From IMG/VR virus record IMGVR_UViG_3300033997_000478, positions 62,001-126,000 of that record: a stretch of 64,000 bases of DNA; one strand, given 5' to 3'. The stretch's first letter is position 1. Every line of letters begins with the position of its first letter. Of the stretch, positions 1,240-62,798 are shown one piece after another. The translations under genes were made by a program, and so were the position numbers. Below the pieces are notes generated by a model. It ran no database searches. It saw only the letters and a list, made by a program, of their open reading frames with translations, and was not told the DNA's origin.

Positions 1240-3639
1240 ATGAAACAGGTCAACGAACACCGCGCCGAATTGGCGTCCTCAGCATCGTTCAACCCGTTCA
1301 TCGCCCATGATTCCTCTGCCCGCGTGCAGATGATGGGCTCGCATCTTTCGCAAGCACTCCCCGTCAAGGATTGCCAACCGCGCCGGATTCTTACCGGCAT
1401 GGAACGGGAATTTGGCCGGGCCACGTTCAATGTCGAGATTCCGGTGGATGCGGAAATCATCGACATCATTCACAAGTTCACCGATACAGCCGGTGCAGGT
1501 GGTATTCGCATCAACCCCACCACCGTGATCATCTACATGGATGCTCGCACCAACCAGTTCGATGCCGTGGAGTTCAACAGCTACCACAGCATGCACCAGT
1601 CGTTCGGCTTCAACTTCGTCCGCACCCAGGCCATGCGCAACCTGCGTCCTGAGCAGTCGATCCCGGCCGGCACCGTACTGGGTCGTTCGCCGACACTGGA
1701 TGATCAGGACAACTACCGGATCGGTCTGAACGTCAAGTCGGCGTTCATGTCCATTCCCGGCGTTACCGAGGACGGCTTCATCGTCTCCGAAAGCCTGTGC
1801 AAGCGCATGACCACCACGTGCATCAAGAAGACCAGCTTCAGCTGGGGCAAGACGTGGTATCCGCTGAACTTGTACGGCGATGAGAAGAACTACAAGCCGA
1901 TGCCCGACATCGGTGATCGCATCCGTGACGATGGCCTGATCTGCACCCTGCGCCGCATGGACCAGGATACGGACATCATGTACTATCCGCTGGAGATGTC
2001 CAACGAAGCCCTGCAACGGGTGGACTACTTCTTCGACCAGCGCGTGTACGGCAAGAAGGGCGCCAAGGTGATCAACATCACCTCCCGCCACGGTCAGCGT
2101 GCATGGCCACGTACACCTGATGGCATGGAAGTGCAGGCCAAGAAGTACTACGACGCCGAGTGTGAGTTCCACCAGGCCATTCTGGACAGCCACCGCAAGT
2201 TGGCTCGTCGCTACGGCGATCGTGTGGCACTGGGTGGTACGTTCTCGATGTTGTTGCGCGAGGCCCGGCTGTTCCTGCCGTGCGAGCAGCGCGCCAAGTC
2301 GACCCAGATGTACCAGCTGCAACCGCTGGACGACTGGCGCATCGACCTGACCTACGAGTACGACTTCGTTCCGACCATCGGCTCCAAGCTGACCGGTCTG
2401 CATGGCGACAAGGGCGTGATCTGCCAGATCTGGCCGGACGAAGACATGCCGGTGGATGAGTGGGGCAATCGCGTTGAAGCGATCTCGCCTGCGTACTCCT
2501 CCATCGACCGCATGAACGATGGCCGACCGATCGAGCATGAGATCAATGGCTCGATGGAAATGATGACCGAGGCGGTTCGTATGGGCATGGGCGCACCGCT
2601 CAAGTTCATCGACCCGGCAACGCATCAGGCCATGCTGGAAGTGCGCGCCGAGCGTGAACGTCGTGGACTGCCGGTGCCCGATGGGCAGGTGGCCGCCGAA
2701 CAGATCGCAGCACGGATCAACGGCGACTACAACAACGCCTTCCACGAGGTCAAGGAGTACTACAAGACCATGTCCCCGAAGTTCGGTGCGATCTTCGATC
2801 GTCCGGATTACCTCAATGCAGGCGGTGGTGCGAAGTACCACATCGACGACCTGCTCAAGGATGGGATGTACTTGTGGGCACCGCTGGATACCCCCAAGAT
2901 CTGGCCGGATGTCATCGACGACATCGATCCGGATACCAAGGCGCGCATGATTGCTGAAAGCATCGTTGCCTCGGATCAGACCTTGGGCATGGTGGTCGGG
3001 GACAAGCAGCTCTACCCGGCACGCCGTTCGATCCTGCGGTTCCGTGGTCGCTCCGGCAAGATCCGTTTTACCGAAGAGCCGATCATGGTGGCTGATCTGT
3101 ACCACATCCTGCTGGAGAAAACCGGCAGCGACTGGTCCGGTGTATCCACGGCCTACCACCAGCACTTCGGCCTGCCAGCCAAGCAATCCAAGCAAGACCG
3201 TGATAGCAGTCCGGGTCGTGCCAATCCGGTGCGCATCTTCGGTGAGGCAGAAGTTCGCCTGACCAGTGCCGTGCTCGATAGCAAGATCGTGGCTGAGACC
3301 ATGGAAATGTCCACCAATCCTGCTGTGCACAAGAACGTGGTGTACAACATCCTCAAGGCACCCCAGCCGTCCAACATCGAAGAGGTGGTGGATCGCAGCA
3401 AGGTCCCGATCGGCAACAGCCGCTCGCAGTCGTTCGTGGCACACGGCCTGCAGTGCGCAGGTATCGAGCTGCGGTACGTCGACCATACCACCGAAGGCGA
3501 GGTCTATCCGGCCGATCCGGGTGGTGCTGCATCGGATCTGGGTCTACTCACTGGGGATGAGGAGGATGACGATGATGATGTCAATGAAAACGAGGACGGC
3601 GACGACAGTGCCGATGATGGCGATGACAGCGACGATTGA
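1240..3639 (+). CDS. Non-virion RNA polymerase beta subunit, C-terminal part (phiKZ gp71-73-like)
   Basis: SSARVQMMGSHLSQA (beta NRALMGSNMQRQA equivalent), GSKLTGLHGDKGVI (beta GDKxxGRHGNKG equivalent), RIFGEAE; acidic C-tail. Confidence 0.92.
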   Translation: MKQVNEHRAELASSASFNPFIAHDSSARVQMMGSHLSQALPVKDCQPRRILTGMEREFGRATFNVEIPVDAEIIDIIHKFTDTAGAGGIRINPTTVIIYMDARTNQFDAVEFNSYHSMHQSFGFNFVRTQAMRNLRPEQSIPAGTVLGRSPTLDDQDNYRIGLNVKSAFMSIPGVTEDGFIVSESLCKRMTTTCIKKTSFSWGKTWYPLNLYGDEKNYKPMPDIGDRIRDDGLICTLRRMDQDTDIMYYPLEMSNEALQRVDYFFDQRVYGKKGAKVINITSRHGQRAWPRTPDGMEVQAKKYYDAECEFHQAILDSHRKLARRYGDRVALGGTFSMLLREARLFLPCEQRAKSTQMYQLQPLDDWRIDLTYEYDFVPTIGSKLTGLHGDKGVICQIWPDEDMPVDEWGNRVEAISPAYSSIDRMNDGRPIEHEINGSMEMMTEAVRMGMGAPLKFIDPATHQAMLEVRAERERRGLPVPDGQVAAEQIAARINGDYNNAFHEVKEYYKTMSPKFGAIFDRPDYLNAGGGAKYHIDDLLKDGMYLWAPLDTPKIWPDVIDDIDPDTKARMIAESIVASDQTLGMVVGDKQLYPARRSILRFRGRSGKIRFTEEPIMVADLYHILLEKTGSDWSGVSTAYHQHFGLPAKQSKQDRDSSPGRANPVRIFGEAEVRLTSAVLDSKIVAETMEMSTNPAVHKNVVYNILKAPQPSNIEEVVDRSKVPIGNSRSQSFVAHGLQCAGIELRYVDHTTEGEVYPADPGGAASDLGLLTGDEEDDDDDVNENEDGDDSADDGDDSDD

Positions 3640-3651
3640 GGGAGATAAGTA

Positions 3652-5643
3652 ATGCGTCGTTTCCATGCTCGTGAACTGGCTGCCATGCCCAAGGCCGAGC
3701 TCTGGGAGATCCCTCAGGAAAGGATCATCGTTGTCTTCGACGACGGTGAGGTGGAATGCTGGACCAGTGAGGCGCTGTACTCGGCCTACATGTGGGGGTT
3801 CTACGTGGACTTCCCCGAAACGCCGGCACTGAAGAAACATCACCTGGGCAAGCGCAAGATTGGAACCAGCACGCATCTGAACATGATCAACGAAGTTCGT
3901 TGGGATTGCCATGATGCCTACGATGGCCAGATTCGTTCGGACATCTTGAACAAGAAAGCGCTGGAATACATCAACATTGCCTACAATGACCTGAGCGAAG
4001 GAAGCGAAGCGTGGGCCACCACGCTGAGCCAGCTGGACATCAACGCGGTGATGCATCACCCGGAGATCAAGGCTGCCAACGAACAGGTCACCATCGCCGA
4101 CAAGACCATCGTGCATGCACATCGCACGATCGAACGGGTCTTGAAGGACGCCAAAGAGCTGGTGGGTAACTCCCTGGCTCTGGCGGTACAGTGCGGGCTG
4201 GTGAAGCTGGGGCAGGTGTTGCAGGTGATTGGTCCGCGAGGATCGGTGACCGACAACGACTCCAACATCTTCCCCTACCCGGTGCAGGTGGGTTTCGCAC
4301 AAGGCCTCTACCGGTTCTACGACAGCTTCATCGAGTCGCGGACGGCCTCCAAGTCGCTGACCTTCACCGAAAAGCCGCTGCAGGATACGGAGTACTTCAA
4401 CCGTAAGTTGCAGCTGCTGGCAGCGACCCTGCGTGATCTGTACGATGGCGACTGCGGTACTGAGCAATACCTGCTGTGGCAGATGGGGCCGGGCGATCTG
4501 GAAGCCTTCAAGGGTAAGTACTACCTGAAGGACGACGGGACGCTGGGCATGATTCAGAACAACGATGAATGCCGTAAGGAACTGGTAGGTAAATCGGTGC
4601 GCATCCGCTCGCCGCTGTACTGCGCCACCCCTGACTCCACGATGGTCTGTACGACCTGCTACGGTGAGATGGAGAAATCCATCCCCCACGGCACCAACAT
4701 CGGCCACGTGGCTGCCACTGCGTTGTGTAAGCAGGCCTCCCAGCGCGTGCTCTCCACCAAGCACTTGGATACCTCCGCTTCCAGCTCGGGTCTGCGCCTG
4801 TCTGAATTCGAACAGCGTTACGTTCGTCTGGGCAATGATCCGAACCTGCTGTTCCTGGCACACCGCCTGGCAGAAGGAGCGAAGATCAAGTTGTACATCT
4901 CCGCCGATGAAGCCGAGCGCATTGCAGAGGTCAAGTCGGCAGAGAACGTGGAGATCCTGCTTCCCAGCCACATCAGTGCGCTGACGCAGGTGACCTTCGT
5001 GGTGACCAAGAACGGCAAGGAAGAAGCCGAAGTCGTGCAGGTGTCCAATGGTAGTCGTACCAGCTCGCTCTCGCGCGAAATGCTGGTGCACCTGCGCACC
5101 CATGGCTGGAAGCTGCTCACCTCCGATCGTGGTGGTAGCAATGACATCGAGATCGACCTGACCGAGTGGGATCCGGATCAGCCGCTGTTTGCAACACCGC
5201 GGCGTCAGGAGAACATGCTCGATTACATGGCGACCATCGAGAAGTTCCTGAAGGCGGCGAAGAAGGGCTCTGCCCATAAGTCGCTGAAGGACTTCATGAC
5301 GGTCGATGGTGCAGCACGGGGTCTTTACGATCTGGTCAGTTCTCGCCTGTTCGTGAACTTCGTGCATCTGGAGATCCTGGTGAAGGTCTGTCAGGTCCGC
5401 TCCACGCATCACCGTGATTCGCGCATCCCGTTGATTGGCAACAAGGTGGAATTCGGTCGTTTCGACTTCACCATCTTCAGCCGCTCGGCCGGTGCGAGCA
5501 TGGCGTATCAGAATCATCGTCAGCAGTGGAATTCGCCGACGACGTATCTGACGCACCTGCGTCCGCCCCATCCGCTGGATCCCATCCTGATGCCGTTGCC
5601 GCAAACGCCATCGGTCCACTGGAAGGCGGGTAATTCGTTGTGA
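3652..5643 (+). CDS. Non-virion RNA polymerase beta' subunit, C-terminal part (phiKZ gp74-like)
   Basis: DGDCGT, IRSPLYC, CTTCYG, GTNIGHVAATALCKQASQRVLSTKH (trigger-loop region), VHLEILV. Confidence 0.92.
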   Translation: MRRFHARELAAMPKAELWEIPQERIIVVFDDGEVECWTSEALYSAYMWGFYVDFPETPALKKHHLGKRKIGTSTHLNMINEVRWDCHDAYDGQIRSDILNKKALEYINIAYNDLSEGSEAWATTLSQLDINAVMHHPEIKAANEQVTIADKTIVHAHRTIERVLKDAKELVGNSLALAVQCGLVKLGQVLQVIGPRGSVTDNDSNIFPYPVQVGFAQGLYRFYDSFIESRTASKSLTFTEKPLQDTEYFNRKLQLLAATLRDLYDGDCGTEQYLLWQMGPGDLEAFKGKYYLKDDGTLGMIQNNDECRKELVGKSVRIRSPLYCATPDSTMVCTTCYGEMEKSIPHGTNIGHVAATALCKQASQRVLSTKHLDTSASSSGLRLSEFEQRYVRLGNDPNLLFLAHRLAEGAKIKLYISADEAERIAEVKSAENVEILLPSHISALTQVTFVVTKNGKEEAEVVQVSNGSRTSSLSREMLVHLRTHGWKLLTSDRGGSNDIEIDLTEWDPDQPLFATPRRQENMLDYMATIEKFLKAAKKGSAHKSLKDFMTVDGAARGLYDLVSSRLFVNFVHLEILVKVCQVRSTHHRDSRIPLIGNKVEFGRFDFTIFSRSAGASMAYQNHRQQWNSPTTYLTHLRPPHPLDPILMPLPQTPSVHWKAGNSL

Positions 5644-9117: not shown

Positions 9118-9507
9118 ATGCCCACTCGTTTGTTGCTCCATACGGCTGTGGAAGGTCTGCCCGCCTCCCATCGTAGCTTGGCACTCCAACGCGGCTGCAT
9201 CCTCCACCTGCGGTTGATCAATGCCAAGAAGGCCATCGCCACATGGTACTCCCCGCTCGGAGATGGTGAACTGCTGTCGTATGCGAAAGACTCTTTCTAC
9301 CGCAACGAGAAAGAAGACGAAGAGATCTACGAGGTCTGGGACAATCCCTTGACGGTGCTGTTGCCTGACGGCTTGCTCAGGCACCTACCCTTCCCCTACG
9401 TTGGCGATGGCACCTACCTGCGCCGTGTACGGCATCGATTGGAGCACACCCCGATCCTGCGGCGTTACCTGAAGGAATACCATCGCTGCGAGATCTACCG
9501 CAGTTGA
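9118..9507 (+). CDS. Hypothetical protein
   Basis: AAGGAG RBS then ATG 9118 (MPTRLLLHT...), ends before a terminator. Confidence 0.75.
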   Translation: MPTRLLLHTAVEGLPASHRSLALQRGCILHLRLINAKKAIATWYSPLGDGELLSYAKDSFYRNEKEDEEIYEVWDNPLTVLLPDGLLRHLPFPYVGDGTYLRRVRHRLEHTPILRRYLKEYHRCEIYRS

Positions 9508-9515
9508 CGGCATAA

Positions 9516-9540
9516 GCCCCCTCCCAGACGGGAGGGGGCG
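9516..9540. terminator. Bidirectional intrinsic terminator
   Basis: GCCCCCTCCC-AGAC-GGGAGGGGGC between convergent genes. Confidence 0.75.
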
Positions 9541-9563
9541 TTGTGCTGCCTTTTCTTTTTGGT

Positions 9564-9821
9564 TTACGCAGCCACCGGGATATTCGGCGCCTTGTCCATC
9601 AGGTGCTTGCGGAACTCGGTCAAGACATCTTCCATCGACGGGGCCGAATGGATCTGCTGACAGATTTCCACCGCATTGACGAAACCACCCGACAGATTGA
9701 CACCTGCGGCACGCCGATAGATCTCCGGGATGTCGCGGATCATGCACAGTTCCTGAGCCGTGGTGGCCTTGGAGATGTTCATGATGATCTCAACGTTGGG
9801 ATATGTACCTTCTACGTCAAG
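9564..9821 (-). CDS. Family B DNA polymerase (exonuclease/motif-A half, phiKZ gp82-like), exon 3
   Basis: Begins LDVEGTYPN; joined to exon 2 (...HVAD) it rebuilds PolB motif A D-L-D-V-E-G-T-Y-P-N; preceded by intron terminal G at 9822. Confidence 0.88.
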   Translation of the reverse strand, partial: LDVEGTYPNVEIIMNISKATTAQELCMIRDIPEIYRRAAGVNLSGGFVNAVEICQQIHSAPSMEDVLTEFRKHLMDKAPNIPVAA

Positions 9822-11520
9822 CGAAATCTTCACATAGATTCGCTAGATCTATGTCGACGACATTTATTTTGTCGTCTGCTCCAGCTTTCACTGGATGCCG
9901 AGACTATATCTTCTACCTCTTGGGTAGGTCACTATTTCGGGACCGCTTGGTCCCTACTCCCCGCTACGGGATAGTCGTTGAACGTTCACCCTCGCAGCGT
10001 CTCACGACGGGGCGAGGTAGCTTCGCTGCTGATTGCCCATTGTAGCATCCGTCGACTTTTCAACCTTTCACGCTCGTCCTTACGGACCACGTTGTAGGGC
10101 GACGACTTTAGGGGGTTCCAGCAATTAAATGACATTCACGCTATCGATTGCTCGATAGGTGGACCTAGTTCTTCTTTCAGTTTGAAGAGGTTGAAACGAT
10201 ACTTGGATTGGTAGGTCTTCTCACCTTGAGCAAGATTGAAGACGTACACGGGCGACAAGTCGAAGTGGTGAGCTGCGGCTTGCCTGGAGGTGAAGAACTG
10301 TTCCTCATTGGTGGTGAGGTCAGTGACGACGATCCCGTCTGGTGATTTGATAGGATGGTCTTTGTAAACTGCAAGATGTCTGGCGCTGTGGTTGGGGAAT
10401 GGATCTCCACCTATCACATAGCGGAAATTGTACCCGTATGCCGGTAGGACGAGATTATCCCGAGCATGCTGGAGGATAGTGCCTGACTTTACACCGAGTA
10501 AGTCTTCCAGATGTTGGGCGCTGGTTCCGATGACGAGATCGCCAGTGAATACATTGCGGGCGACGATACCTCCGCCCGACCCATGACGACTCACCGAACC
10601 TGCATCGACTTCCGACCAGTTTGAACCGTCGTCGTATTTGAACAACAGGCGGTCGGAGAACACCTTGTTGGGACATTTACTCAACCGATACTGGATGATG
10701 TTGGGAGTCAACTTACCAGTTTGCCGATGGCATTCTGCAATACTCGGGAAGAGGTGTTCCTCGCCGGTGTTGAGGTCACGCATCCAGACAGATTGGAGAC
10801 TGGCCCTCAGGCCTGTGTCGTAGGCGTGTTGGTTATTGGTCGCATGCGTCGCCCACTCCAGGTTGTCGAGACGATCATCGCCCTTTTGACCGTTTTTATG
10901 GTTGACGACGATCTGGTTGACAGAGGCATTATATCGCTTGAACGTTAGCGACAATGCGCGATGTCTAAAAATAGTTCGACTAAAACCGCTCTCGTTGCTA
11001 ACTCTGGCGGCGCGATAACCCCCGCTGCGAACATCTTTCTCCTTCGTGACGTACCAACTCAAGACCTGCCCAGTTTCAATGTTTCTCAACTCGCCATCAC
11101 GATTGATCGCGTAGCGCGTGAAGAATGGAACGTAAAAGAATGCAGGCATTCCCTCTACTTCCAGAGGACCATGTCGAAAGCGATACGTCAGGTTTACCAC
11201 GTTGAGGTTCTTGGGGTCGCCGTCCTTAAAGAGCGGTTCGATCTCCTCCCACAGGTGCTCTTCCAGAGCAATCTGCCTATACGCTACCAGAACCACCATT
11301 CCGGCAGAGTATTTCTTTGTTCCGCCGACCCACGTCAGCTCGACCCAATGTTCACCATTTTCAAAGACAAGTGGTAGGGTTCGACCAGCACTGTCTTTGA
11401 TTTCACCGTATTGTGTCACCAAGTATCGCCGGGCTGAACCCGGCAGGTATTTCGTTTCTTCAAACATGAGATTCTCACCAAGATATGTTCACCATAACAT
11501 AGGTGAGTTAAGAACTATTA
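9822..11520 (-). mobile_element. Group I intron (IA2-like) no. 2 of the DNA polymerase gene, with HNH ORF
   Basis: Minus-strand core: P AATTGCTGGAA, Q GGCAATCAGCAGC, R GTTCAACGACTA, S AAGATATAGTCT; 5' exon ends in U (GAT), intron ends in G; splicing restores frame. Confidence 0.9.
10136..11467 (-). CDS. Intron-encoded HNH homing endonuclease
   Basis: RHRAL..TF, VNHKNGQKGDDRLDNLEWAT...N.QHA; C-terminal NUMOD1-like repeats; lower GC. Confidence 0.9.
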   Translation of the reverse strand: MFEETKYLPGSARRYLVTQYGEIKDSAGRTLPLVFENGEHWVELTWVGGTKKYSAGMVVLVAYRQIALEEHLWEEIEPLFKDGDPKNLNVVNLTYRFRHGPLEVEGMPAFFYVPFFTRYAINRDGELRNIETGQVLSWYVTKEKDVRSGGYRAARVSNESGFSRTIFRHRALSLTFKRYNASVNQIVVNHKNGQKGDDRLDNLEWATHATNNQHAYDTGLRASLQSVWMRDLNTGEEHLFPSIAECHRQTGKLTPNIIQYRLSKCPNKVFSDRLLFKYDDGSNWSEVDAGSVSRHGSGGGIVARNVFTGDLVIGTSAQHLEDLLGVKSGTILQHARDNLVLPAYGYNFRYVIGGDPFPNHSARHLAVYKDHPIKSPDGIVVTDLTTNEEQFFTSRQAAAHHFDLSPVYVFNLAQGEKTYQSKYRFNLFKLKEELGPPIEQSIA

Positions 11521-11617
11521 ATCGGCCACGTGCGCACGGCCAAAGCTCTTGATGTTAGGCAGACCCTTCAGAAGGACCAGACCGTCATCAGAGACCAGAT
11601 GGGACGGCAAGGTGACA
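11521..11617 (-). CDS. Family B DNA polymerase exon 2 (97-nt micro-exon)
   Basis: T+GTC ACC TTG CCG TCC CAT... = (I)VTLPSHLVSDDGLVLLKGLPNIKSFGRAHVAD; host-type codons between two intron cores; absent from the ORF track. Confidence 0.88.
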
Positions 11618-13102
11618 CGTTATCTTCGACCGGGGGCGTAACGCCCGGCCCGCGCCGTTACGCGCAGCTGTAGGTCTCCCTACAGACGAGACTATATCTT
11701 CCTCTCCGAGAGAGGGACACCATTTCGAGTCACTTGACTCTACAGGCTGACTAGGCCTTAGTCGTTGAACCTTCTCCTGGGTACGGAGCTTGGCTGCTGA
11801 TTGCCCAATCCTGTTCGTTGTCAAACCGTCAATACGTGCTTTCGCCGTACTTGTGGTGAACAGGCTCTAAGGGGGTTCCAGCAATTAAATGTCTTATCAC
11901 TCAGCCGTTACCGGCTGAGGGGACTTCTTTTGTATGGTAAGTTGTCTATAGCGCAATCCTTGACGGACGGCGCCTTGCCTTGCCAAGGTCGCCACGCGGA
12001 TAGGAGAGATCCCCACCTGCGTTGCTACCTCAAACTTATCACCGAAGTAGACTTCTTCATTCGTGACCGCGTCCTCTACGATAATCGCATCGGATTGTAC
12101 GTTCACTCTGCCCTTGAAGAATTCTAAATGTTTCTCTGTAAACTCAGGCCACCCTTCAAAGCCCTCAAAGTGACGAAACAACCAGCCCTTATATGGGGTT
12201 ACTGTTTTTCGACTACACTGTTGGCTAATGGTGGACTGCTGGACACCGCTGATTTCAACGGCCATGGCCATCGTCGGAACAACCACTGTCTTTTTCTCAA
12301 AGACATTGTAGATGATCAGCTCTGTATTCCGAACGGACTTATTGGCATGACTGTCCAATTCCAACCAGTCCTGATCGGCGTACTTGAACCGCCAGCCATC
12401 GTGGTAACGTTTCTGATTACCCGTGCGGGTCCGGTAAGACACCACGGTGTGACTCAAGCCCAACCGATCCACTGCTTCTTGCATGGTGTTAAAGTGCAGT
12501 TGCGAGCCAGTGCGCCAGTTCCATGCATCCACCGGTACGACCTTTTCCGAATGGAGCCCTTGGTCGTAGGCGTGCTTAACGTTCTCAGAGGGCGTGACCC
12601 ACTCTAGGTTATCCAGACGATCATCCCCTGGAATGCCATTGCGGTGGTTCACCCAACGTTCTGCCGGATGGAAGTTGTAGTCGGTGAAGGTCATTAGGAG
12701 AAGGCGATGACGTCTACCCGGTCTCTTATTACCCACGTCGTCCAATAAATTCGCCACCGCATAGCCGCCAGTGATGCGTTTTTCAGGAATAGGTTTGGTC
12801 TTTCCCCACTTCAACTCTTTAGCGGTTGAGTTACTTCTCAATCGCCCGTCACGTGAGATCAGGTAGTTGCTGAAGCCTGGAATGAAGTAGAAGCCCTTAA
12901 ACAGCCAGTGCTCTACCGGAGCTTTGAATTTGTATGTGGTGGGGCGTTCCTCGTGCTCGAGGAGGGCGATTTGATCCCAGAGTTCGGCGGGCAGGCCGAT
13001 GCTAGGGAAAAGCGCTTTGATTCTTTCTTCGGTGTTCATGTGACGCACTCGTTGTCGGTGTCACATTATAAGGCGACTTAAATACCTTTTTACTATACTG
13101 AA
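11618..13102 (-). mobile_element. Group I intron (IA2-like) no. 1 of the DNA polymerase gene, with HNH ORF
   Basis: Core: AATTGCTGGAA, GGCAATCAGCAGC, GTTCAACGACTA, AGAGTCAAGTGACTCGAAA (P7.2-like), AAGATATAGTCT; exon ends TGGAT, intron ends ...GATAACG. Confidence 0.9.
11897..13039 (-). CDS. Intron-encoded HNH homing endonuclease
   Basis: RRHRLLLMTF, VNHRNGIPGDDRLDNLEWVT.SEN..HAY; paralog of the 10136-11467 ORF; start ATG 13039 or GTG 13048. Confidence 0.9.
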   Translation of the reverse strand: MNTEERIKALFPSIGLPAELWDQIALLEHEERPTTYKFKAPVEHWLFKGFYFIPGFSNYLISRDGRLRSNSTAKELKWGKTKPIPEKRITGGYAVANLLDDVGNKRPGRRHRLLLMTFTDYNFHPAERWVNHRNGIPGDDRLDNLEWVTPSENVKHAYDQGLHSEKVVPVDAWNWRTGSQLHFNTMQEAVDRLGLSHTVVSYRTRTGNQKRYHDGWRFKYADQDWLELDSHANKSVRNTELIIYNVFEKKTVVVPTMAMAVEISGVQQSTISQQCSRKTVTPYKGWLFRHFEGFEGWPEFTEKHLEFFKGRVNVQSDAIIVEDAVTNEEVYFGDKFEVATQVGISPIRVATLARQGAVRQGLRYRQLTIQKKSPQPVTAE

Positions 13103-14535
13103 ATCCAGTCAGTGATGTCAATCACGTACTGATCGTTCTCATCGACCATCTTGTTGGACGTAGACGCTGCCACCAGACCATGCTTTTGCACCATGAAGTG
13201 CAAGTCGTCACAGGTACGACGCGGCTGGCTGGGGAAGCGCTTGTACTCGGAGAAGGTGGTCATCAGCGAGATCATCGACCGCAGGTCGGTAATCTGCTCG
13301 TCCAGAATTTCCACCGAGACGCAGTCGAAGATGTTGTAAACGCAGTATTCGATCTTGTAGTTCTTCTGCATGAACCGGTGCCACGGGCCCCTACCCGAGG
13401 TCAAGTGATCTGCTTCCTTGAACTTCAGCTTTCGAATACCCAACTCCTTCTCAAGGATGGCATCCAGACTGTAGGACGGATCCTTACCGCCGGCAATACG
13501 CAGCTTCAGGTAGACGCACATTGCATCCAGTGCGTACCACTTGGCCGGACAGATCACTTCATGCCAACGCTCTGCCGGAGCCAACGCCATGGTCTTGCCG
13601 GAGGCGGTGACCTTCTGTGCCGGACCTTCCTTGTATTCGAAGTAACGGAACTCGCGCGGGATCGAGGGATCGGAGAACACATCGGGTAGGTTGTACCCAT
13701 AGCGCTCCAGCGCCTCGATCATCTTCTTCATATCGAAGTTGATGTTCCAGAAGCTGACAAAGTCCGGACCCCATTCATGGGCGGTTTCGATGATGCGTGC
13801 CGAGCACTGGCCGGCGTTGTCGACGAACTCGATCTCCAAGTTCAGTCCACGCTGCTCGATCAGATTGACCGCCACGGTCCGTGGCTGGCTGGGGTCTTTC
13901 TTGTGCTTGGGGTTGGGTGCTTCGATGTCGCCCAGGTAGTAGTTGAACTTCTGGTAGATCTGCCGAGTGGCCTCTTCGTCGGACATGCCTTCCAAGAAGC
14001 TACGCACCACCACCAGTCGTGCCCGATCACGCATGGTGATCGAGAGCATGATGATCTCGCCGGTCTCCTCATCGAACATGTCGGTTTCCGAGTCGATCAC
14101 GGCCACCAGATTGTCCGAGACCCGATTGGGCCAACGGTTGAGGTAGTGATGCTTGATCAGTACCGGCGCTGGCACGTCCGTGCCGTAGACGTACGGACTC
14201 TGGGCAATCTGACGCAGGTCATTGCGTCCGGTCGGAATGCGACCCAAGGCACGGGTGATGGCCTGGGGCATGTTGATGTCCGAGGACTTCCATTCCTGAA
14301 GTCGCTCGATCTTTTCCCACTCCTTCTTGTCCTTATGGTTGCGATAAGGCTCTTTGGTGATGTAGAAGGGGCGCTGGTAATTGTAGATCTGCCGCAGGCG
14401 CGATTCGCGCGTACCGTCGGGCTTGTATTCGTATTCCTTGACCACCACCAGGTCATTGGGCGAGCCATCGTTGGCGGTAAAGTACAACGCGTGCTTGCAC
14501 TCAAACTCGCTCTTGGGAGGCTGCTGGTCACTCAT
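13103..14535 (-). CDS. Family B DNA polymerase (phiKZ gp82-like), exon 1: 3'-5' exonuclease domain
   Basis: ExoI IDSETD, ExoII WNINFD, YSLDAIL, ExoIII YCVYNIFD; spliced product 595 aa (13103-14535 + 11521-11617 + 9564-9821). Confidence 0.9.
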
Positions 14536-18971: not shown

Positions 18972-19765
18972 CATTCCAGGTAGCGGTAGTCGTCACGTCG
19001 TGGATCGCGGACGCGGTTCCAAACAGTCTTTGGGTCGATACCGAGCTCACGTGCCGCGCCAGCCACACTATCGAACTGACGATTCTCAGCGATGACTTTC
19101 TTGGCAAACGGATTGTTCCCACCAGACCAAGCCTCTTTACTTCCCTCTTTACCCCAGCGGGTACTCTGACCCTCACGGATTTTCCTCGAGCGTTCAGCGA
19201 GCTGCTCAGGGGTCATTTCCTTCAGGGCCCGACGTCGCGCAACTGCCATCTTTTCTTTCATCCCCTCACGCCCCATCACGTGGGAGATAGGAGAACGAAC
19301 ATCGGTGACAGCATTTAACAGAAGCGACTTGTCAGCGTTGTCAATGCGCCGCTTCTCGTCTTCGTAGGCCTCCTCTCGGGTGCCAAAGACGAACACGGTC
19401 AGGGTCCATTTGTCCTCGCCAGGATCTTGATCCCACAGGGCCTGCATGGCTTTGTTGTTGTGCTTTCCTTTGCGCAGACTCCAGAAGTGCGAAGCTCTGC
19501 GGTTTTGGATGTTCTGCGTGCTACCCACATAGAAACGTCCTGTCGCTTTGTGGGTGAGCCAGTACGTATACCCGATCGGAATCTTCGCTTCCTCTGCGAC
19601 CTCCGGGTACACGCCATCGTCGAAGAGCCGCCATTGCGACCACTTCGGGTCTTCACTGTAGACGCGGGCAAGGATGTAAGTCTTACTCACACCCAGTGCC
19701 CGCGCAGCTTCAGCTACTGATTTATAGATCTTGTCGTCAATGGTGACGTTGAAATAGTTCCGCAT
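18971..19765 (-). CDS. Free-standing GIY-YIG homing endonuclease
   Basis: GYTYWL...FYVGSTQN...R..SH; NUMOD1-like motifs (YKSVAEAARALG, FDSVAGAARELG) at both ends. Confidence 0.9.
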   Translation of the reverse strand: MRNYFNVTIDDKIYKSVAEAARALGVSKTYILARVYSEDPKWSQWRLFDDGVYPEVAEEAKIPIGYTYWLTHKATGRFYVGSTQNIQNRRASHFWSLRKGKHNNKAMQALWDQDPGEDKWTLTVFVFGTREEAYEDEKRRIDNADKSLLLNAVTDVRSPISHVMGREGMKEKMAVARRRALKEMTPEQLAERSRKIREGQSTRWGKEGSKEAWSGGNNPFAKKVIAENRQFDSVAGAARELGIDPKTVWNRVRDPRRDDYRYLE

Positions 19766-58548: not shown

Positions 58549-59226
58549 ATGAAGAACAAAGACCTTACCGGTCGGCAGTTCGGTAAGCTTACGGTTCTTC
58601 GTGCAGATGGAGCTCGAGCGCGCCGGGACTACCGAGAGGTTTTGTGGCTGTGCCGCTGTGACTGCGGCGTGGAAAAGACCATCGGTAGTCGAGCCCTCCT
58701 TCACAAGGTCCACGGCAGTAAGTCGTGCGGTTGCGTGAGGAGCCAGAAGCTCGTCGCTGCCGCCTACAGTACCAAACACGGGCTCAAACAACACCGACTA
58801 TACCCGATCTGGAAAACGATGCGTATGCGGTGCAACAACCCGAATAACCATAAGTACGCCAACTATGGCGGTCGGGGAATTCGGGTCTGTGAACGCTGGT
58901 CAGACTTTAAGACCTTCTTGGATGACATGGGCCCATCATTTACAGAGGGTTTGAGTCTGGATCGCATTGACGTCAACGGGCATTACGAACCGGGTAATTG
59001 CCGCTGGGCGACTTACAAGGTCCAAGCCAATAATCGTGAAAGGTCGGGACGCCTCCAAGTTGTCGTCAAGGTTCCGGACACCTTGGACGATTCAGACCTC
59101 TCGAATTGGATGGATGTGGCTGAGGTGGTCAAAGTTCTCCAACCCATCCAGAAGCAACACGACAGCCCTTTCAAGTTTTATCGCCGCATCACATCAACCG
59201 ACGTTATCTACAGCCTGGAGCTTTAA
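58549..59226 (+). CDS. Free-standing HNH homing endonuclease
   Basis: DLTGRQFGKLTV, WLCRCDCG, SCGC, LYPIWKTMRMRC, YGGRGIRVCERW, SLDRIDVNGHYEPGNCRWAT. Confidence 0.9.
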   Translation: MKNKDLTGRQFGKLTVLRADGARARRDYREVLWLCRCDCGVEKTIGSRALLHKVHGSKSCGCVRSQKLVAAAYSTKHGLKQHRLYPIWKTMRMRCNNPNNHKYANYGGRGIRVCERWSDFKTFLDDMGPSFTEGLSLDRIDVNGHYEPGNCRWATYKVQANNRERSGRLQVVVKVPDTLDDSDLSNWMDVAEVVKVLQPIQKQHDSPFKFYRRITSTDVIYSLEL

Positions 59227-60696
59227 GTGAAGCAATATCTCGATCTTCTGCGTGACGTTCGCGAGAATGCACGTTACAAGCTGGACCGCACCAAGGTCGG
59301 CTGCTACTCAGTCTTCGGTCGACAGGTGAGGTTCAATCTTGCCGATGGTTTTCCGATGTGCACCACCAAGAAGCTGCACCTGCGTTCGATCATCCACGAG
59401 CTGCTGTGGTTCCTCAAGGGTGACACCAACATCGGTTACCTCAAGAGCCTGGGCGTGCGCATCTGGGACGAATGGGCCTCAGCGTCGGGAGATTTGGGGC
59501 CGATCTATGGGTTCGGCTGGCGGTACGCGCCCGTCGAAAATCCCAAGCATCTGGTCCAAGTTGCGATTCGCTCCGACCAAGATGCCGACTACGTGGAACA
59601 GATCCCCGCGTTCCAACCGCCCATCAAGTGCGATCTCAACAATGAACGCATGTGGGCCATCGAAGACCTGGGTGCAGACGGCGGGAACACCCGCTACAAG
59701 GTCCAGTTCGCCTCTGGTTTCATTGGTGAGATCTCGCGTCCGAACTGGCGTGCATTGACCGACTACGATGTGGTCGATGGTTACGCACGTACAGTGTGCG
59801 GTGTCGGCTATCTCGGTAATCCGGTCCTCAAGCACGACCGCCTGTACGCTCTTTGGCGTAACATGTTGGCCCGCTGCTACGACCCCGCACACCCCAGCTA
59901 TCCGTCGTATGGCGGTGCGGGCATCACTGTCTCGCCGATCTGGCATAGCTACGAGCAGTTCGTTCGCACGACAACGCGGCTACCGCTGTACGCACTGTGG
60001 AATATCCATCCGGGTAACTACGACCTGGACAAGGATTACTACGGAAGCGGCGTGTACTCGCCTAGCACCTGTGTGTTCATCCCACAGGAACTCAATGCCG
60101 CTCTCCCGAAGGACGGTATCGCGCTGGCCGTCAAGGGGCAGCTCTTTGCGAACTGGGAGGCCTTCGCGCGCCACAACCGTATTCGCCCGGATTACATCAA
60201 GGCTCGAATCTCTGAGGGGCATAAGTGCGGCGAATTCCACCCGGACGATTTTGAAGAAGTTCGTCCGAAGGAAGGGTTCTTGTATCGACAGAAGTTCTAC
60301 GTCGACCAGATCGCTGATGCCATCCATACGCTGCGAACGTCCCCGGCTTCCCGTCGGATCATCGTCAACGCCTGGCTACCGTCACTGATCGCAGACCAAG
60401 CACTTACCCCGTGTCATGCCATGTTCCAGTTCTACGCTGAAGAGCTGACCCTGCAAGAGCGCGCCACCCTGTACATCGCCAAGCAGTACCCGGAAGGCAT
60501 CAGTGCGGCGCAGTACAACGCTGACCACCTGCTGGGTCTGGTCAAGATCTACGAGGAAGAATCCAAGCTCACCTTCCATGGCGAGTACGGTGCTGCTGGC
60601 CAGCCGGAATTGGAACAGCGACTGGAAATGATCGAAGTGATCCTCGAAGAGCACAAGATCCCGAAGCATCGCCTGTCCTGCCAGCTCTACCAGCGT
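59227..60696 (+). CDS. thyA: Thymidylate synthase exon 1, with in-frame HNH-like insertion
   Basis: DRT.VG, TTKKL, ELLWFL.G, IWDEW, LGPIYG, SRRII, PCH, YQR; ends CGT at the intron 5' splice site. Confidence 0.93.
59527..60300 (+). mobile_element. HNH-type endonuclease domain (~258 aa) inserted in frame in ThyA
   Basis: [12 protein letters not shown]...[10 protein letters not shown]...W, LDKD....[14 protein letters not shown] between [10 protein letters not shown] and VDQI. Confidence 0.8.
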
Positions 60697-60799
60697 AAAC
60701 AACACTGCGCCATTGCAGCGTGAGCTGCATTGAAACACATTCCTTAAAGCAATACATGTCCAGGAAGTAGTGTTCCGGGGCAATGACAGGAGAATTAAT

Positions 60800-61387
60800 T
60801 TGAGCGAACCACCGTCTGAACCAGAGGAATTCTGGAAAAGAGTCGAGAAATTCAAAAGACTAGAAGTCTCCAATCTGGGTGGTGCGCGAACGGTGTGGCC
60901 GCACAAGGTTAAGGTTCTTCAGCCGATGAAGGCACCTTCCAGTAAGGATCATTACCTGAAAATTTCAGTTAGTCCTTCGGAAGGAGGTAAACAAAAACAG
61001 GTCATGATCCACACCCTCGTTGCTGAAGCTTTCATTGATCGACCATCGGGTATTGTCGATATGGAAGTCAACCACAAGGATGGGGTAAAGACGAACAATG
61101 TTGCGACGAATCTCGAATGGACAACCCACCAAGGGAATATCCAACATTCGTTCGAAAGCGGATTGAGGGCGGCGTGTGTCGGTGAACTTCATCCACAGGC
61201 GAAATCCGTCCGGGCTATAAATGTGATGGACGGCGAAATTATCGCTGCCGGGACCGTTGACGAGTTGGCTCAGAAACTGGGCGTCGAAAGATCCTTCATT
61301 CGAAGGAGATTAAATGGAACCGTCACATCCATAAATCCTAAATTGCCTTACCGAATCGAAGGTCTGGGAAAGGGCAACACTACCTGA
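60800..61387 (+). CDS. Intron-encoded NUMOD4-HNH homing endonuclease (P2 loop)
   Basis: EVSNLG..R, IHTLVAEAFI, VNHKDGVKTNNVATNLEWTT...N..H; AGGAGA RBS before TTG 60800 (GTG 60770 alternative). Confidence 0.9.
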   Translation: MSEPPSEPEEFWKRVEKFKRLEVSNLGGARTVWPHKVKVLQPMKAPSSKDHYLKISVSPSEGGKQKQVMIHTLVAEAFIDRPSGIVDMEVNHKDGVKTNNVATNLEWTTHQGNIQHSFESGLRAACVGELHPQAKSVRAINVMDGEIIAAGTVDELAQKLGVERSFIRRRLNGTVTSINPKLPYRIEGLGKGNTT

Positions 61388-61530
61388 GCTAAATCAGTGT
61401 CCTCACCCAAAGGAATGTGTAAACCTCTCTAAAACGGGAAACTCTCGACTGAGACAATCCGTTGCTAAATCGAAACAACCTGAATAAAGACCTACACTAT
61501 CCTCAGGCTAGTAATCAGAGGAGAATTGTG

Positions 61531-62307
61531 ATGACAATTGCCGCCTATATCCTGACTGACCCCATCTCTGGGTTCGAGTACTACGGCAGCAGTGAAAATG
61601 TGGAAGTACGTCTTGATCGACACTTCCGCGACCTTCAAGCCAACCAACACCACAACAGTAGACTGCAGGAGCTGTACAACGCAGGTCGTGTGTTGGACAA
61701 GATCATCTTTGAAAGTAGTACAATCGAAGATGCCCGTGAAACCGAACTGGCGTTTATCAATTCCCACCAAGGTAGCTGGAGAATGATGAACATTGGTCTT
61801 GGCGTTAACGGGGGCGATAATCTCTCGAACCATCCAGAGCGGGAACGCATCATTTCGAAGATTTCTGAGTCCGTCCGAACGAGAATGGCTCAAATGTCAC
61901 CGGAAGATCGCAAGGAAAAGTGGGGACGCCCAGGCGCCAGCAACCCCATGTTCGGTAGGACCCACTCTGAAGAGGTCCGCCTTGCAAGTTCCAAGCTTCA
62001 TCGGGGGAACACCCACGCTCTGGGAAACGAATGGTCCCCTGAAGCTAGGGCAAAGTTGTCGAAAATAGCTTCCGAACGGACAGGAGACAAAAATCCTTTC
62101 TTCGGTAAGACGCATTCGGCAGAGAGTCGCGAAAAAATAAGGCAGGCCAAACTCGGCGGGGGACCGCCGACGAATGCCATGAAGGTAATGGTCAAGGGTA
62201 TCGTTTACAATTCTGTCAAAGATGCTTGCGATGGTGTCGGGATCTCGTATCCGACCATGGCTAAGCGTCTGAAAAGTGACGACCCCGATTATTCATTTGT
62301 CTCGTAA
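61531..62307 (+). CDS. Intron-encoded GIY-YIG homing endonuclease with NUMOD3 repeats (P6 region)
   Basis: AAYIL...YYGSS....R...H, GGD, NPMFGRTHSEE, NPFFGKTHSAESREKI; GAGGAG RBS. Confidence 0.9.
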   Translation: MTIAAYILTDPISGFEYYGSSENVEVRLDRHFRDLQANQHHNSRLQELYNAGRVLDKIIFESSTIEDARETELAFINSHQGSWRMMNIGLGVNGGDNLSNHPERERIISKISESVRTRMAQMSPEDRKEKWGRPGASNPMFGRTHSEEVRLASSKLHRGNTHALGNEWSPEARAKLSKIASERTGDKNPFFGKTHSAESREKIRQAKLGGGPPTNAMKVMVKGIVYNSVKDACDGVGISYPTMAKRLKSDDPDYSFVS

Positions 62308-62501
62308 AGGCCTAACGACTATCCAAAGTACCCTAGGACTAAAAGGGTAACGAGTAGAGTAGACTCCAAGTGGAGTCGAAAAGAGAGGGGTCTCCAAGGA
62401 AGGAGATCGTGATATAGTCTAAACTGCATGGTGACATGTAGCTGTCAAGCTTGAAGAACTTGACGGGTTAGGAGTAACGATCCTAACTGAAGGTCGGCAT
62501 G

Positions 62502-62798
62502 AGCGCCGACATCTTCCTTGGCGTACCGTTCAACATCGCCAGCTACGCGCTGCTGACGCACATGGTGGCCCACGTGGTGGGCATGGCGCCGGGCGACTTC
62601 GTCCACACCTTCGGTGACCTGCACGTCTACTCCAACCACATCGACCAGATCGAGTTGCAGATGACCCGTGACCCGCTGCCGCTGCCCAAGCTGCTGCTCA
62701 ACCCGGACGTGAAGAACATTGACGACTTCACCTTCGATGACATCCGTGTGGTCGGCTACGAGTCGCATCCGGCCATCAAGGGCGACGTGGCGGTCTGA
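62502..62798 (+). CDS. thyA: Thymidylate synthase exon 2
   Basis: [29 protein letters not shown]...IDDF, Y.SHPAIK..VAV; spliced product 588 aa. Confidence 0.95.

What the first reader, a model, noticed from the sequence alone, without database searches (positions are those of the whole stretch)
60697..62501. One group I intron hosting two unrelated homing endonucleases (NUMOD4-HNH in P2, GIY-YIG in P6)
Seen: a single catalytic core. The perfect 9-bp P2 stem encloses the HNH ORF, and the GIY-YIG/NUMOD3 ORF lies between the Q and R elements. Each ORF has its own RBS. Established: T4 td carries GIY-YIG I-TevI in P6, and phage introns usually carry one HEG. Inference: sequential double invasion. 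With the fused HNH and the upstream free HNH, four nucleases sit on this one thyA locus, suggesting an arms race at thyA between co-infecting phages.
Basis: partly seen in the sequence, partly recalled or inferred. Interest (0 to 1): 0.7.

Follow-up and report, generated by a model that had tools for sequence, protein, structure and literature searches.

The report
Recombinant thyA intron with two nucleases

Summary
Window 60697-62501 is a single td-like group I intron in thyA at the codon junction YQR|SAD. It carries an intact I-HmuI-like HNH gene (60800-61387) and an intact I-TevI/I-BmoI-like GIY-YIG gene (61531-62307). No second ribozyme core was found.

Two corrections are needed. The stem around the HNH gene is an 11-bp extra arm in J2/3 (P2.1-like), not P2. 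A separate 6-bp hairpin with a GUGA loop occupies the P2 position.

The double occupancy is not simply two ORF insertions. A sister intron (L096) is 100% identical in the 5' part, including the HNH arm, and in the 3' end. Its whole centre (61433-62386) is different. The centre in this window matches GIY-only thyA introns best, and the flanks match HNH-only and ORF-less introns best. The intron is therefore a recombinant.

Public contigs show every stage at this one site:
- intron-less alleles
- ORF-less introns
- HNH-only introns
- GIY-only introns
- the double form, also seen in independent samples
- a decaying form with a 588-bp deletion in the GIY-YIG gene

A divergent tract from -9 to +232 in the exons marks recent entry into this phage lineage. 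Splicing and nuclease activity are untested. The "four nucleases" claim is only half supported.

The parts
58549..59226 (+). Free-standing HNH-family ORF (225 aa) just upstream of thyA. It is specific to this lineage.
   Evidence: phrog_374 E=6e-62 and phrog_3377 E=2e-42. No Pfam or PDB hit. Close relatives L091-L094 and L096 carry a 141-aa or 163-aa two-transmembrane-like ORF in its place.
59227..60696 (+). thyA exon 1 (490 codons), ending in ...LYQR. It includes two large in-frame insertions.
   Evidence: Pfam Thymidylat_synt E=5e-55 in two stretches. Colinear with the 588-aa intron-less ThyA of relatives.
60697..62501 (+). Group I intron (td-like, with P7.1 and P7.2), 1805 nt, one catalytic core.
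   Evidence: Helix complementarity. Partial RF00028 hits. Homologous introns at the same site score 62.5-95 bits. RNAalifold on the 3' halves finds 36 pairs, 22 with compensatory changes.
60705..60710 (+). Internal guide sequence CUGCGC. It pairs with exon 1 GCGU (60693-60696, with U-G at the splice site) and with exon 2 AG (62502-62503).
   Evidence: The same GCGC guide is present in OMKO1, JA29, L011, L095, L161 and L183.
60714..60729 (+). P2 hairpin UGCAGC-GUGA-GCUGCA.
   Evidence: Homologous hairpins with changed pairs are UGCCGC-GUGA-GCGGCA in L183/L184 and CUAGGA-GCAA-UCCUAG in OMKO1.
60735..61420 (+). Extra arm in J2/3 (P2.1-like). It has an 11-bp perfect closing stem (60735-60745 / 61410-20) and an inner 8-bp stem (60767-74 / 61376-83), and it encloses the HNH gene.
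   Evidence: L095 has a different perfect 11-bp stem (CAUGUAAUCUA/UAGAUUACAUG) at the same position. ORF-less and GIY-only homologues lack the arm.
60800..61387 (+). HNH homing endonuclease gene (195 aa, TTG start; AGGAGA at 60788-60793), I-HmuI-like.
   Evidence: HNH_3 at 29.2 bits. phrog_59 E=1e-36. 1U3E E=8e-10, with the ...NHKDG...NN...NLEW... motif aligned. dN/dS about 0.08 against the 71%-identical L095 copy.
61433..62386 (+). Central block that differs from the sister intron L096: P4, P5, P6/P6a with the GIY-YIG gene, P7 5' strand, P7.1, P7.2.
   Evidence: L096 is 736/736 identical for 60697-61432 and 115/115 identical for 62387-62501. In between it is unalignable or 85% identical. The block 62313-62386 is closest to the GIY-only intron L184 (89%). 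The 3' end 62444-62501 is closest to L095 and L161 (79% and 78%).
61531..62307 (+). GIY-YIG homing endonuclease gene (258 aa; GGAGA at 61520-61524) in the P6a loop (P6a strands 61471-78 / 62297-62304).
   Evidence: GIY-YIG, NUMOD3 and I-TevI_DNA-bd. 1I3J E=5e-6 and 1MK0 E=7e-4, with the Tyr, Tyr and Arg positions aligned. The protein has a single Cys, so it lacks I-TevI's zinc finger.
61549..62136 (+). Stretch missing in a natural variant: an in-frame 588-bp deletion that leaves a 62-aa ORF holding only the DNA-binding end.
   Evidence: Contig L099 and a contig of run X5.
62317..62487 (+). P7 (62317-22 / 62414-19), P7.1, P7.2, P3' (62383-88, pairing with 61424-29), P8, P9, P9.1, P9.2.
62502..62798 (+). 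thyA exon 2 (98 codons plus stop), starting [11 protein letters not shown].
   Evidence: Pfam positions 169-266 of Thymidylat_synt. Alignment to relatives.
62502..62733 (+). Exon tract that entered with the intron. Together with 60687-60696 it is the only strongly diverged part of thyA compared with the intron-less relatives.
   Evidence: Against L094 there are 0 mismatches from -400 to -10, about 57 from -9 to +232, and 100% identity from +233 to +294.

Best explanation
This is one self-splicing group I intron in the phage's only thyA gene. It carries two intact homing-endonuclease genes in two different peripheral loops: an I-HmuI-like HNH gene in an extra arm between P2 and P3, and an I-TevI/I-BmoI-like GIY-YIG gene in P6a.

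How it works (inferred):
- The ribozyme removes itself from the pre-mRNA and joins ...YQR to SAD..., giving a 588-aa ThyA.
- Each ORF is translated from its own ribosome-binding site.
- The two enzymes attack thyA alleles of co-infecting relatives near the insertion site. Repair then copies the intron and the neighbouring exon sequence into those alleles.

How it arose (shown by comparison): it is a recombinant of two intron lineages that occupy the same thyA site.
- The 5' part (P1, P2, HNH arm, P3 5' strand) and the 3' end (P8-P9.2) belong to an HNH-bearing lineage (L096, L095; the ORF-less forms are L161 and L166).
- Everything between the two P3 strands (P4-P6, the GIY-YIG gene, P7 5' strand, P7.1, P7.2) belongs to a GIY-only lineage (L181, L183, L184, L011, JA29).
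- The exchange points lie in short sequences that all these ribozymes share (J3/4 and P3'/P8).

The element entered this phage lineage recently, bringing 10 nt of upstream exon and about 230 nt of downstream exon with it. It is already decaying in some populations.
For: One core with correct splice sites. The spliced length equals that of the intron-less homologues.

Both genes are intact and carry family hallmarks. The HNH gene is under purifying selection (dN/dS about 0.08).

The arm is real. ORF1 is enclosed by perfect 11-bp stems of entirely different sequence in ours and in L095, at the same J2/3 position.

Same site, different cargo:
- ORF-less: L128, L136, L161, L166.
- GIY-only: JA29, L011, L024, L181, L183, L184.
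- ORF after P9: OMKO1, L012.
- HNH-only: L095.

Recombination. L096, L097 and L100 are 100% identical to ours outside 61433-62386 and different inside. Block-wise identities place the centre with L184 and the 3' end with L095 and L161.

Independent sightings of the double form: L098 (2529 nt, 99.96% identical, from another sample), a second contig with the same gene order, and run X4.

Recent entry. The exons of ours and L096 differ by about 5% while their shared intron parts are identical. The tract from -9 to +232 is diverged against intron-less relatives.
Against: - No RNA evidence for splicing. The one splice-like joint (60696>62502, run X13) rests on 27 letters and may come from other organisms' thyA. 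Exact fragments in RNA-labelled runs cross the exon-intron border unspliced and are probably DNA.
- No activity data exist for either nuclease.
- The window itself does not reach Rfam's threshold (16.8 and 12 bits).
- The direction of the exchange is inferred from block similarities of 68-89%, not from a sampled GIY parent. The nearest GIY-YIG protein is only 56% identical.
- The 588-bp deletion allele shows the GIY-YIG gene is dispensable and may already be inactive.
Confidence: 0.78

Rival explanations
1. Two successive ORF-only invasions of one unchanged intron backbone. A GIY-only intron like L183/L184 received the HNH arm in J2/3. The L096 form arose later by replacement of the centre.
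For: GIY-only introns L181, L183 and L184 can be aligned with ours along the whole length. The arm sits exactly at TGAA^(T)AAACC of their J2/3. The HNH arm looks like a self-contained cassette with its own stem.
Against: P9.1-P9.2 and P1-P2 of ours are closer to the HNH-lineage and ORF-less introns L095 and L161 than to L183/L184 (79%/78% against 66%/68% in 62444-62501). Even under this model the ours/L096 pair still requires an exchange of the centre.
Confidence: 0.17
2. One of the two genes is a dead passenger. Only the HNH enzyme still drives mobility, and the GIY-YIG gene is on its way out.
For: A 588-bp in-frame deletion allele occurs in two data sets. L096 holds only a 54-aa remnant of another endonuclease in P6. 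The short upstream (10 nt) and long downstream (about 230 nt) exon tract does not fit a cut 23-25 nt upstream, where I-TevI cuts (PMC2988022).
Against: The 258-aa frame is intact, with GIY-YIG, three NUMOD3-type repeats and a helix-turn-helix end, and the aligned catalytic Tyr, Tyr and Arg are present. It is identical on five contigs.
Confidence: 0.3
3. Assembly artefact: the metagenome assembler joined two intron variants present in one sample.
For: Variants with identical flanks do co-exist in public data.
Against: A single 2529-nt contig from another sample spans exon 1, HNH, GIY-YIG and exon 2 at 99.96% identity (L098). A further contig has the same gene order. Run X4 tiles the locus with exact pieces. 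The deletion allele keeps both junctions.
Confidence: 0.03
4. Twintron: the HNH arm is a second, nested intron.
For: It is a discrete insertion bounded by a stem.
Against: The arm has 686 nt, of which 588 are ORF. No second RF00028 match at E<=10 was found. The flanking 65 nt and 33 nt hold only two stems.
Confidence: 0.02

Closest known systems
Phage T4 td intron with I-TevI
   Same: Group I intron of the td type (P7.1 and P7.2) in a thymidylate synthase gene. A GIY-YIG endonuclease gene lies in the P6 loop. The core sequences are close (GACAAUCCGUUGCUAAAU, AACGACUAUCC, GAUAUAGUCU). The DNA-binding end matches 1I3J.
   Different: By my recollection of the T4 td junction (not checked here), the insertion site is 21 nt upstream of td's: YQR|S rather than FLG|LPFN. 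The protein has no zinc finger. A second endonuclease gene is present.
Bacillus mojavensis thyA intron with I-BmoI (and, from memory, the Bacillus phage beta22 thy intron)
   Same: GIY-YIG enzyme with NUMOD3 repeats and no zinc finger, targeting thyA. PMC5009752 states that the td and thyA introns lie at different positions and carry their ORFs in different loops.
   Different: Whether the I-BmoI or beta22 site equals YQR|S could not be checked, because those papers are not held. Each has one ORF only.
phiKZ-like (OMKO1, PA02) and Dickeya JA29 jumbo-phage thyA introns
   Same: Same insertion site, the same GCGC guide sequence, and homologous core.
   Different: One ORF each: after P9 in the phiKZ group, GIY-YIG in P6 in JA29. 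None has the J2/3 arm.
Bacillus phage SPO1/SP82 DNA-polymerase introns with I-HmuI and I-HmuII
   Same: I-HmuI-type HNH enzyme (1U3E, E=8e-10). Intron variants at one site compete between related phages (Goodrich-Blair and Shub 1996, cited in PMC11620839).
   Different: Different host gene, and one ORF per intron.
'Biorfic' group I introns of Podospora anserina mitochondria (nad1-i4, cox1-i7)
   Same: One group I intron with two ORFs, occurring in one-ORF and two-ORF forms in nature. The optional ORF moves together with adjoining intron sequence (PMC4964425, citing Sellem and Belcour).
   Different: Fungal mitochondria rather than a phage, with a different mix of endonuclease families. Here the moved unit is the whole ribozyme centre, not an ORF plus a short tail.
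Domain shuffling between T4 introns (Bryk and Belfort, Nature 1990; recalled, not held in the library)
   Same: Recombination between different group I introns at short conserved core sequences, giving chimeric introns.
   Different: That was seen in laboratory crosses between introns in different genes. Here it is a natural product between introns at the same site, and it stacks two endonuclease genes.

Membership tests
Group I intron (Rfam RF00028; td-like subgroup with P7.1/P7.2) | Score at or above the curated Rfam threshold (50 bits) | tested here: not met
   The window gives only partial hits of 16.8 and 12 bits, because two ORFs split the model. Homologues at the same site pass: L095 62.5, OMKO1 69.4 and L012 95.1 bits.
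Group I intron (Rfam RF00028; td-like subgroup with P7.1/P7.2) | P1 with a U-G pair at the 5' splice site, a guide sequence that also pairs with exon 2, and a terminal G | tested here: met
   GCGU/GCGC, CUGCGC at 60705-60710, G at 62501.
Group I intron (Rfam RF00028; td-like subgroup with P7.1/P7.2) | Complete P3-P9 core, including the P3/P7 pseudoknot strands, P7.1 and P7.2 | tested here: met
   All strands are complementary. 22 of 36 pairs in the 3' half covary across 10 introns.
Group I intron (Rfam RF00028; td-like subgroup with P7.1/P7.2) | Self-splicing | not testable with these tools
   No reliable spliced read was found.
HNH homing endonuclease, I-HmuI type (NUMOD4 + HNH_3) | HNH_3 domain with the catalytic His and the Asn residues | tested here: met
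   29.2 bits against a cut-off of 24.8. EVNHKDGVKTNNVATNLEW aligns to I-HmuI VDHKDGNKDNNLSTNLRW.
HNH homing endonuclease, I-HmuI type (NUMOD4 + HNH_3) | N-terminal NUMOD4 module | tested here: inconclusive
   No Pfam NUMOD4 hit at E<=0.01. However, residues 12-40 align with residues 3-30 of I-HmuI, and homologues carry PF07463.
[quoted passage not shown] | GIY-YIG catalytic domain with Tyr, Tyr and Arg | tested here: met
   28.5 bits against a cut-off of 22.6. The alignment to 1MK0 keeps Y6, Y17 and R27. The Glu and Asn lie outside the aligned stretch.
[quoted passage not shown] | NUMOD3 repeats and a C-terminal helix-turn-helix DNA-binding domain | tested here: met
   NUMOD3 at 51.4 bits. I-TevI_DNA-bd at 24.9 bits, just below its cut-off of 27. 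1I3J at E=5e-6.
[quoted passage not shown] | Zinc finger in the linker (I-TevI only) | tested here: not met
   The 258 residues contain only one Cys (translation). The architecture is therefore I-BmoI-like.
Twintron | A second ribozyme core nested in the first | tested here: not met
Two-ORF ('biorfic') group I intron | Two ORFs in separate loops of one core, with one-ORF forms of the same intron in nature | tested here: met

The most novel reading that the evidence does not exclude
The mobile unit here is not only the ORF or the whole intron. It may also be the ribozyme's central domain together with its endonuclease gene. In that reading, the GIY-YIG block spreads into thyA alleles already occupied by a rival HNH intron, using the conserved core sequences as homology arms, possibly helped by its own nuclease. 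A site that counts as 'immune' because it holds an intron would still be open to invasion. Two-nuclease introns would then be the visible product of intron-against-intron competition between co-infecting jumbo phages.
Probability: 0.2. Interest if true: 0.8.

Novelty: new variant of a known kind. Interest (0 to 1): 0.62.

Why it matters
Phage group I introns are usually described as carrying one endonuclease gene or none, and an occupied site is taken to be safe from further homing. I found no description of a phage or bacterial intron with two endonuclease genes of different families. The searches turned up only the fungal mitochondrial two-ORF introns.

This locus offers a natural series at a single gene site: empty, ORF-less, HNH-only, GIY-only, double and decaying forms. 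Two of the alleles are identical except for the ribozyme centre. That makes three questions directly testable:
- Can ribozyme domains be swapped and still splice?
- Do two nucleases widen the range of alleles that can be attacked?
- Do introns compete for a site that is already occupied?

It also adds a jumbo-phage case to the recent finding that intron endonucleases decide the outcome of mixed infections (PMC11620839).

Tried and rejected
- Rfam at curated thresholds found nothing at the locus.
- megablast against isolate phages found only conserved thyA pieces.
- RNA evidence. Two searches for runs and two read layings gave no trustworthy spliced read. The 60696>62502 joint in X13 has only 27 letters on one side. 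A joint at 60733>61421, which would be an intron without the HNH arm, has only 21. Both are leads, not findings.
- A semi-global identity table was discarded because free gaps inflated the values. It was replaced by a MAFFT-based block table.
- Intein reading of the ThyA insertion was rejected by inspecting the translation: no Cys, Ser or Thr at the boundaries and no His-Asn end. No intein or Hint profile was searched for specifically. The stretch is conserved as part of ThyA.
- The idea that the recoded junction of intron-less relatives is purely an escape patch was weakened. The diverged tract runs on to +232, so most of it is exon sequence imported with the intron. Even so, LMQRSGDE is unique among the 56 ThyA sequences in which the motif could be read, out of the first 59 listed.
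- Papers on SPO1/SP82 homing (PMC421625) and the beta22 intron (PMC45293) are not held.
- No structure or complex prediction was run, because sequence matches to solved structures sufficed.
Full report
**Context.** The window is bases 62001-126000 of a 324,428-bp viral record with direct terminal repeats, so it comes from a jumbo phage. The genome has a single thyA, five HNH_3 genes and two GIY-YIG genes. Four further group I introns reach Rfam's threshold.

- thyA exon 1 runs 59227-60696 and exon 2 runs 62502-62798. Joined, they give 588 codons. That is exactly the length of the uninterrupted ThyA of the nearest relatives (P0001 and P0002), whose DNA is 94-97% identical around the locus.
- The 5' splice site follows a U that pairs with G in P1 (GCGU/GCGC). 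The guide CUGCGC at 60705-60710 also pairs with the AG that opens exon 2. The intron ends in G.
- Complementary strands exist for P2, P3, P4, P5, P6, P6a, P7, P7.1, P7.2, P8, P9, P9.1 and P9.2.
- An RNAalifold run on the 3' halves of ten thyA introns from this same site recovers P7, P7.2, P8, P9, P9.1 and P9.2. It finds 36 pairs, 22 of which keep pairing through changes on both sides.
- Rfam's curated threshold is not reached in the window, because two ORFs interrupt the model. The permissive scan finds two partial matches, which by the hand-mapped helices cover P3-P6 and P7-P9 of a single core, and no other match.
- Homologous introns with less cargo pass the threshold: L095 at 62.5, OMKO1 at 69.4 and L012 at 95.1 bits.

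**The two genes.**
- ORF1 most likely starts at TTG 60800, after AGGAGA, the same start that gene callers chose for P0121. It has an HNH_3 domain and matches phrog_59 at E=1e-36. It aligns to the solved I-HmuI structure over residues 12-142, with the catalytic His-Lys-Asp-Gly and Asn positions in place. Against its 71%-identical counterpart in L095, pN is 0.18 and pS is 0.73, giving dN/dS of about 0.08. The gene has therefore been kept by selection.
- ORF2 starts at ATG 61531, after GGAGA. It has GIY-YIG and NUMOD3 domains and an I-TevI-type DNA-binding end. It matches 1I3J and 1MK0 with Tyr, Tyr and Arg aligned. It has a single cysteine, so it lacks I-TevI's zinc finger and resembles I-BmoI in layout.

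**Where the genes sit.**
- The HNH gene is not in P2. A hairpin UGCAGC-GUGA-GCUGCA (60714-60729) follows the guide sequence. It corresponds to the only hairpin between P1 and P3 in OMKO1, L011, L024, L128, L161 and L183.
- The HNH gene lies in an additional arm inserted into J2/3 at TGAA^(T)AAACC. The arm is closed by an 11-bp perfect stem (60735-45 / 61410-20) and has a second 8-bp stem just around the ORF.
- In L095 the same position holds a different perfect 11-bp stem (CAUGUAAUCUA/UAGAUUACAUG). Every pair differs and pairing is kept, which is the best evidence available here that the arm folds as drawn.

**Relatives at the same site.** The junction YQR|S is used by a whole family of phage thyA introns that share the GCGC guide.

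| Form | Examples |
|---|---|
| ORF-less, 280-337 nt | L128, L136, L161, L166 |
| GIY-YIG alone in P6 | Dickeya phage JA29, L011, L024, and the three closest homologues of our enzyme (L181, L183, L184; 52-56% aa) |
| ORF after P9 | phiKZ-like phages, L012 |
| HNH arm alone | L095 |

In a sample of 80 viral thyA loci, 76 were uninterrupted at this site, 4 held ORF-less introns and none held two ORFs.

The double form occurs only in this phage and in near-identical contigs from other samples. These are L098 (2529 nt, 99.96% identical), one more contig with the same gene order, and run X4. That excludes an assembly artefact.

**How the double form arose.**
- Contigs L096, L097 and L100 carry an intron identical to ours for 60697-61432 (736 of 736 bases, HNH gene included) and for 62387-62501 (115 of 115).
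- Between those points they hold 405 nt of a different P4-P6, followed by about 70 nt that are 85% identical to ours. That P4-P6 has the AAUUGCUGGGA...CAAUCAGCAGCGAAG sequence type, with a long P5 extension and a 54-aa remnant of a phrog_2081 / I-HmuI-type endonuclease in P6.
- The two alleles therefore differ by an exchange of everything enclosed by the two P3 strands.
- Block-wise identities show which part came from which lineage. The block 62313-62386 is closest to the GIY-only intron L184 (89%, against 69% for L095). The block 62444-62501 is closest to L095 and L161 (79% and 78%, against 68% and 66% for L184 and L183).
- P1-P2 also sits nearer to L095 than to L184, by my count of the sequences printed.
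- I therefore read the intron as flanks from the HNH lineage with a centre from the GIY lineage.
- The crossover points fall in sequences that all these ribozymes share: CCUCUCUAA at P3-J3/4 and GAGGGGUCUC at P3'-P8. This is inference. The GIY parent itself has not been sampled, and the reverse order (arm inserted into a GIY-only intron, centre later replaced in L096) keeps about one chance in six.

**Recent movement and decay.**
- The exons of ours and L096 differ by about 5%, while the shared intron parts are identical. The intron is therefore younger than the split between the two phages.
- Against the intron-less relatives there is no mismatch from -400 to -10 of the insertion site. About 57 mismatches fall from -9 to +232, and identity is 100% from +233 to +294. 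This is the footprint of exon sequence imported with the intron.
- The tract is short upstream and long downstream. That fits a break at or downstream of the insertion site better than a cut 23-25 nt upstream, where I-TevI cuts (PMC2988022). This is a hint, no more, that the HNH enzyme drove the entry.
- The intron-less relatives carry LMQRSGDE at the site, whereas the other 53 of the 56 ThyA sequences in which the motif could be read (out of the first 59 listed) have YQRS, usually followed by AD. The guide sequence could not pair with their exon. Whether that allele resists the nucleases is untested.
- A 588-bp in-frame deletion inside the GIY-YIG gene (61549-62136) occurs in L099 and in run X5. 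It leaves a 62-aa ORF consisting of the DNA-binding end.

**The side claims.**
- The upstream ORF (58549-59226) is a member of HNH-annotated PHROG families (phrog_374, E=6e-62). It replaces a small membrane-like ORF of the relatives. It is a lineage-specific free-standing element, although no Pfam or PDB match confirms a catalytic site.
- The 'fused HNH' in ThyA (about residues 113-345) matches phrog_2081. It shares only a 46-aa module with the upstream ORF. It has no Pfam hit and is conserved within ThyA of relatives down to about 50% identity. It is an old domain insertion, not evidence of a fourth active nuclease.

**Comparison with what is known.**
- Each part is of a known kind: a td-like intron, an I-HmuI-like gene and an I-BmoI-like gene.
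- Two-ORF group I introns with one-ORF forms in nature are described for Podospora mitochondria (PMC4964425).
- Recombination between T4 introns at core sequences was, as I recall, shown in the laboratory (Bryk and Belfort 1990; not held here).
- Competition between intron endonucleases of related phages is established (PMC11620839 and its references).
- What is new is the combination in a phage: two endonuclease families in one ribozyme, produced by exchange of the ribozyme centre between rival introns at one site, with the intermediate and decaying forms all present in public data.

**Limits.** Splicing, expression and cleavage were not observed. No host is known.

Noticed in passing
window 9385-14535, minus strand: The DNA polymerase gene (13093-14535, phrog_3011 E=4e-173) is followed by two group I introns that pass Rfam (11668-11951 at 71.8 bits; 9879-10180 at 63.2 bits). 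Each is directly preceded by a long ORF with an HNH_3 domain (11952-13048 and 10181-11467, phrog_59). An HNH gene placed 5' of the P3-P9 core, as in the thyA intron, seems to be the usual layout in this genome. A fourth case lies at G000 3120-4179.
   Followed up: partly
window 59530-60270 and about 60440-60670 (inside thyA exon 1): ThyA carries two large in-frame insertions. The first is about 245 aa after WRYAP, matches phrog_2081/953/374 and has a degenerate nuclease-like motif. The second is about 75 aa between FQFYA and LSCQLYQR. Both are kept in relatives' 511-589-aa ThyA. There are no intein boundary residues. Their function is unknown.
   Followed up: partly
L091-L094 (loci), position equivalent to window 60687-60696 + 62502-62513: The closest intron-less relatives have a junction in which 12 of 22 bases differ, including full codon-family switches (CGT to AGA, AGC to TCG). 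It reads LMQRSGDE instead of the near-universal LYQRSADI. This may be a homing-site escape allele.
   Followed up: partly
L096:4860-5021: The sister intron holds in P6 a 54-aa remnant (phrog_2081 E=4e-14; I-HmuI_NUMOD-like). P6 of that lineage was therefore once occupied by a third, different endonuclease gene.
   Followed up: yes
window 60733/61421 (run X13): One contig in a wastewater run joins 60733 to 61421. That is exactly the intron without the HNH arm. Only 21 letters lie on the shorter side, so it may instead be a related GIY-only intron.
   Followed up: no
window 60584-60768, 60998-61161, 62583-62795 (runs X16, X17, X24): Exact fragments of this locus appear at low depth in runs labelled with single organisms (coded A and B), some of them RNA libraries. 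This may be a clue to the host, or it may be contamination.
   Followed up: no
window 19337-19573, minus strand: The genome's second GIY-YIG domain gene (271-aa open frame). Its context was not examined.
   Followed up: no
L184:1629-2357: In a phage with a GIY-only thyA intron, a second, free-standing GIY-YIG / I-TevI_DNA-bd gene lies directly upstream of thyA. Free-standing GIY-YIG genes also lie next to uninterrupted thyA in L008-L010 and L018-L023. thyA attracts this enzyme family both inside and outside introns.
   Followed up: partly
L113, L118, L129, L156, L137: Some viral ThyA have FNMR|S, FTMR|S or VYIR|S in place of LYQR|S at the homing site, without an intron.
   Followed up: no
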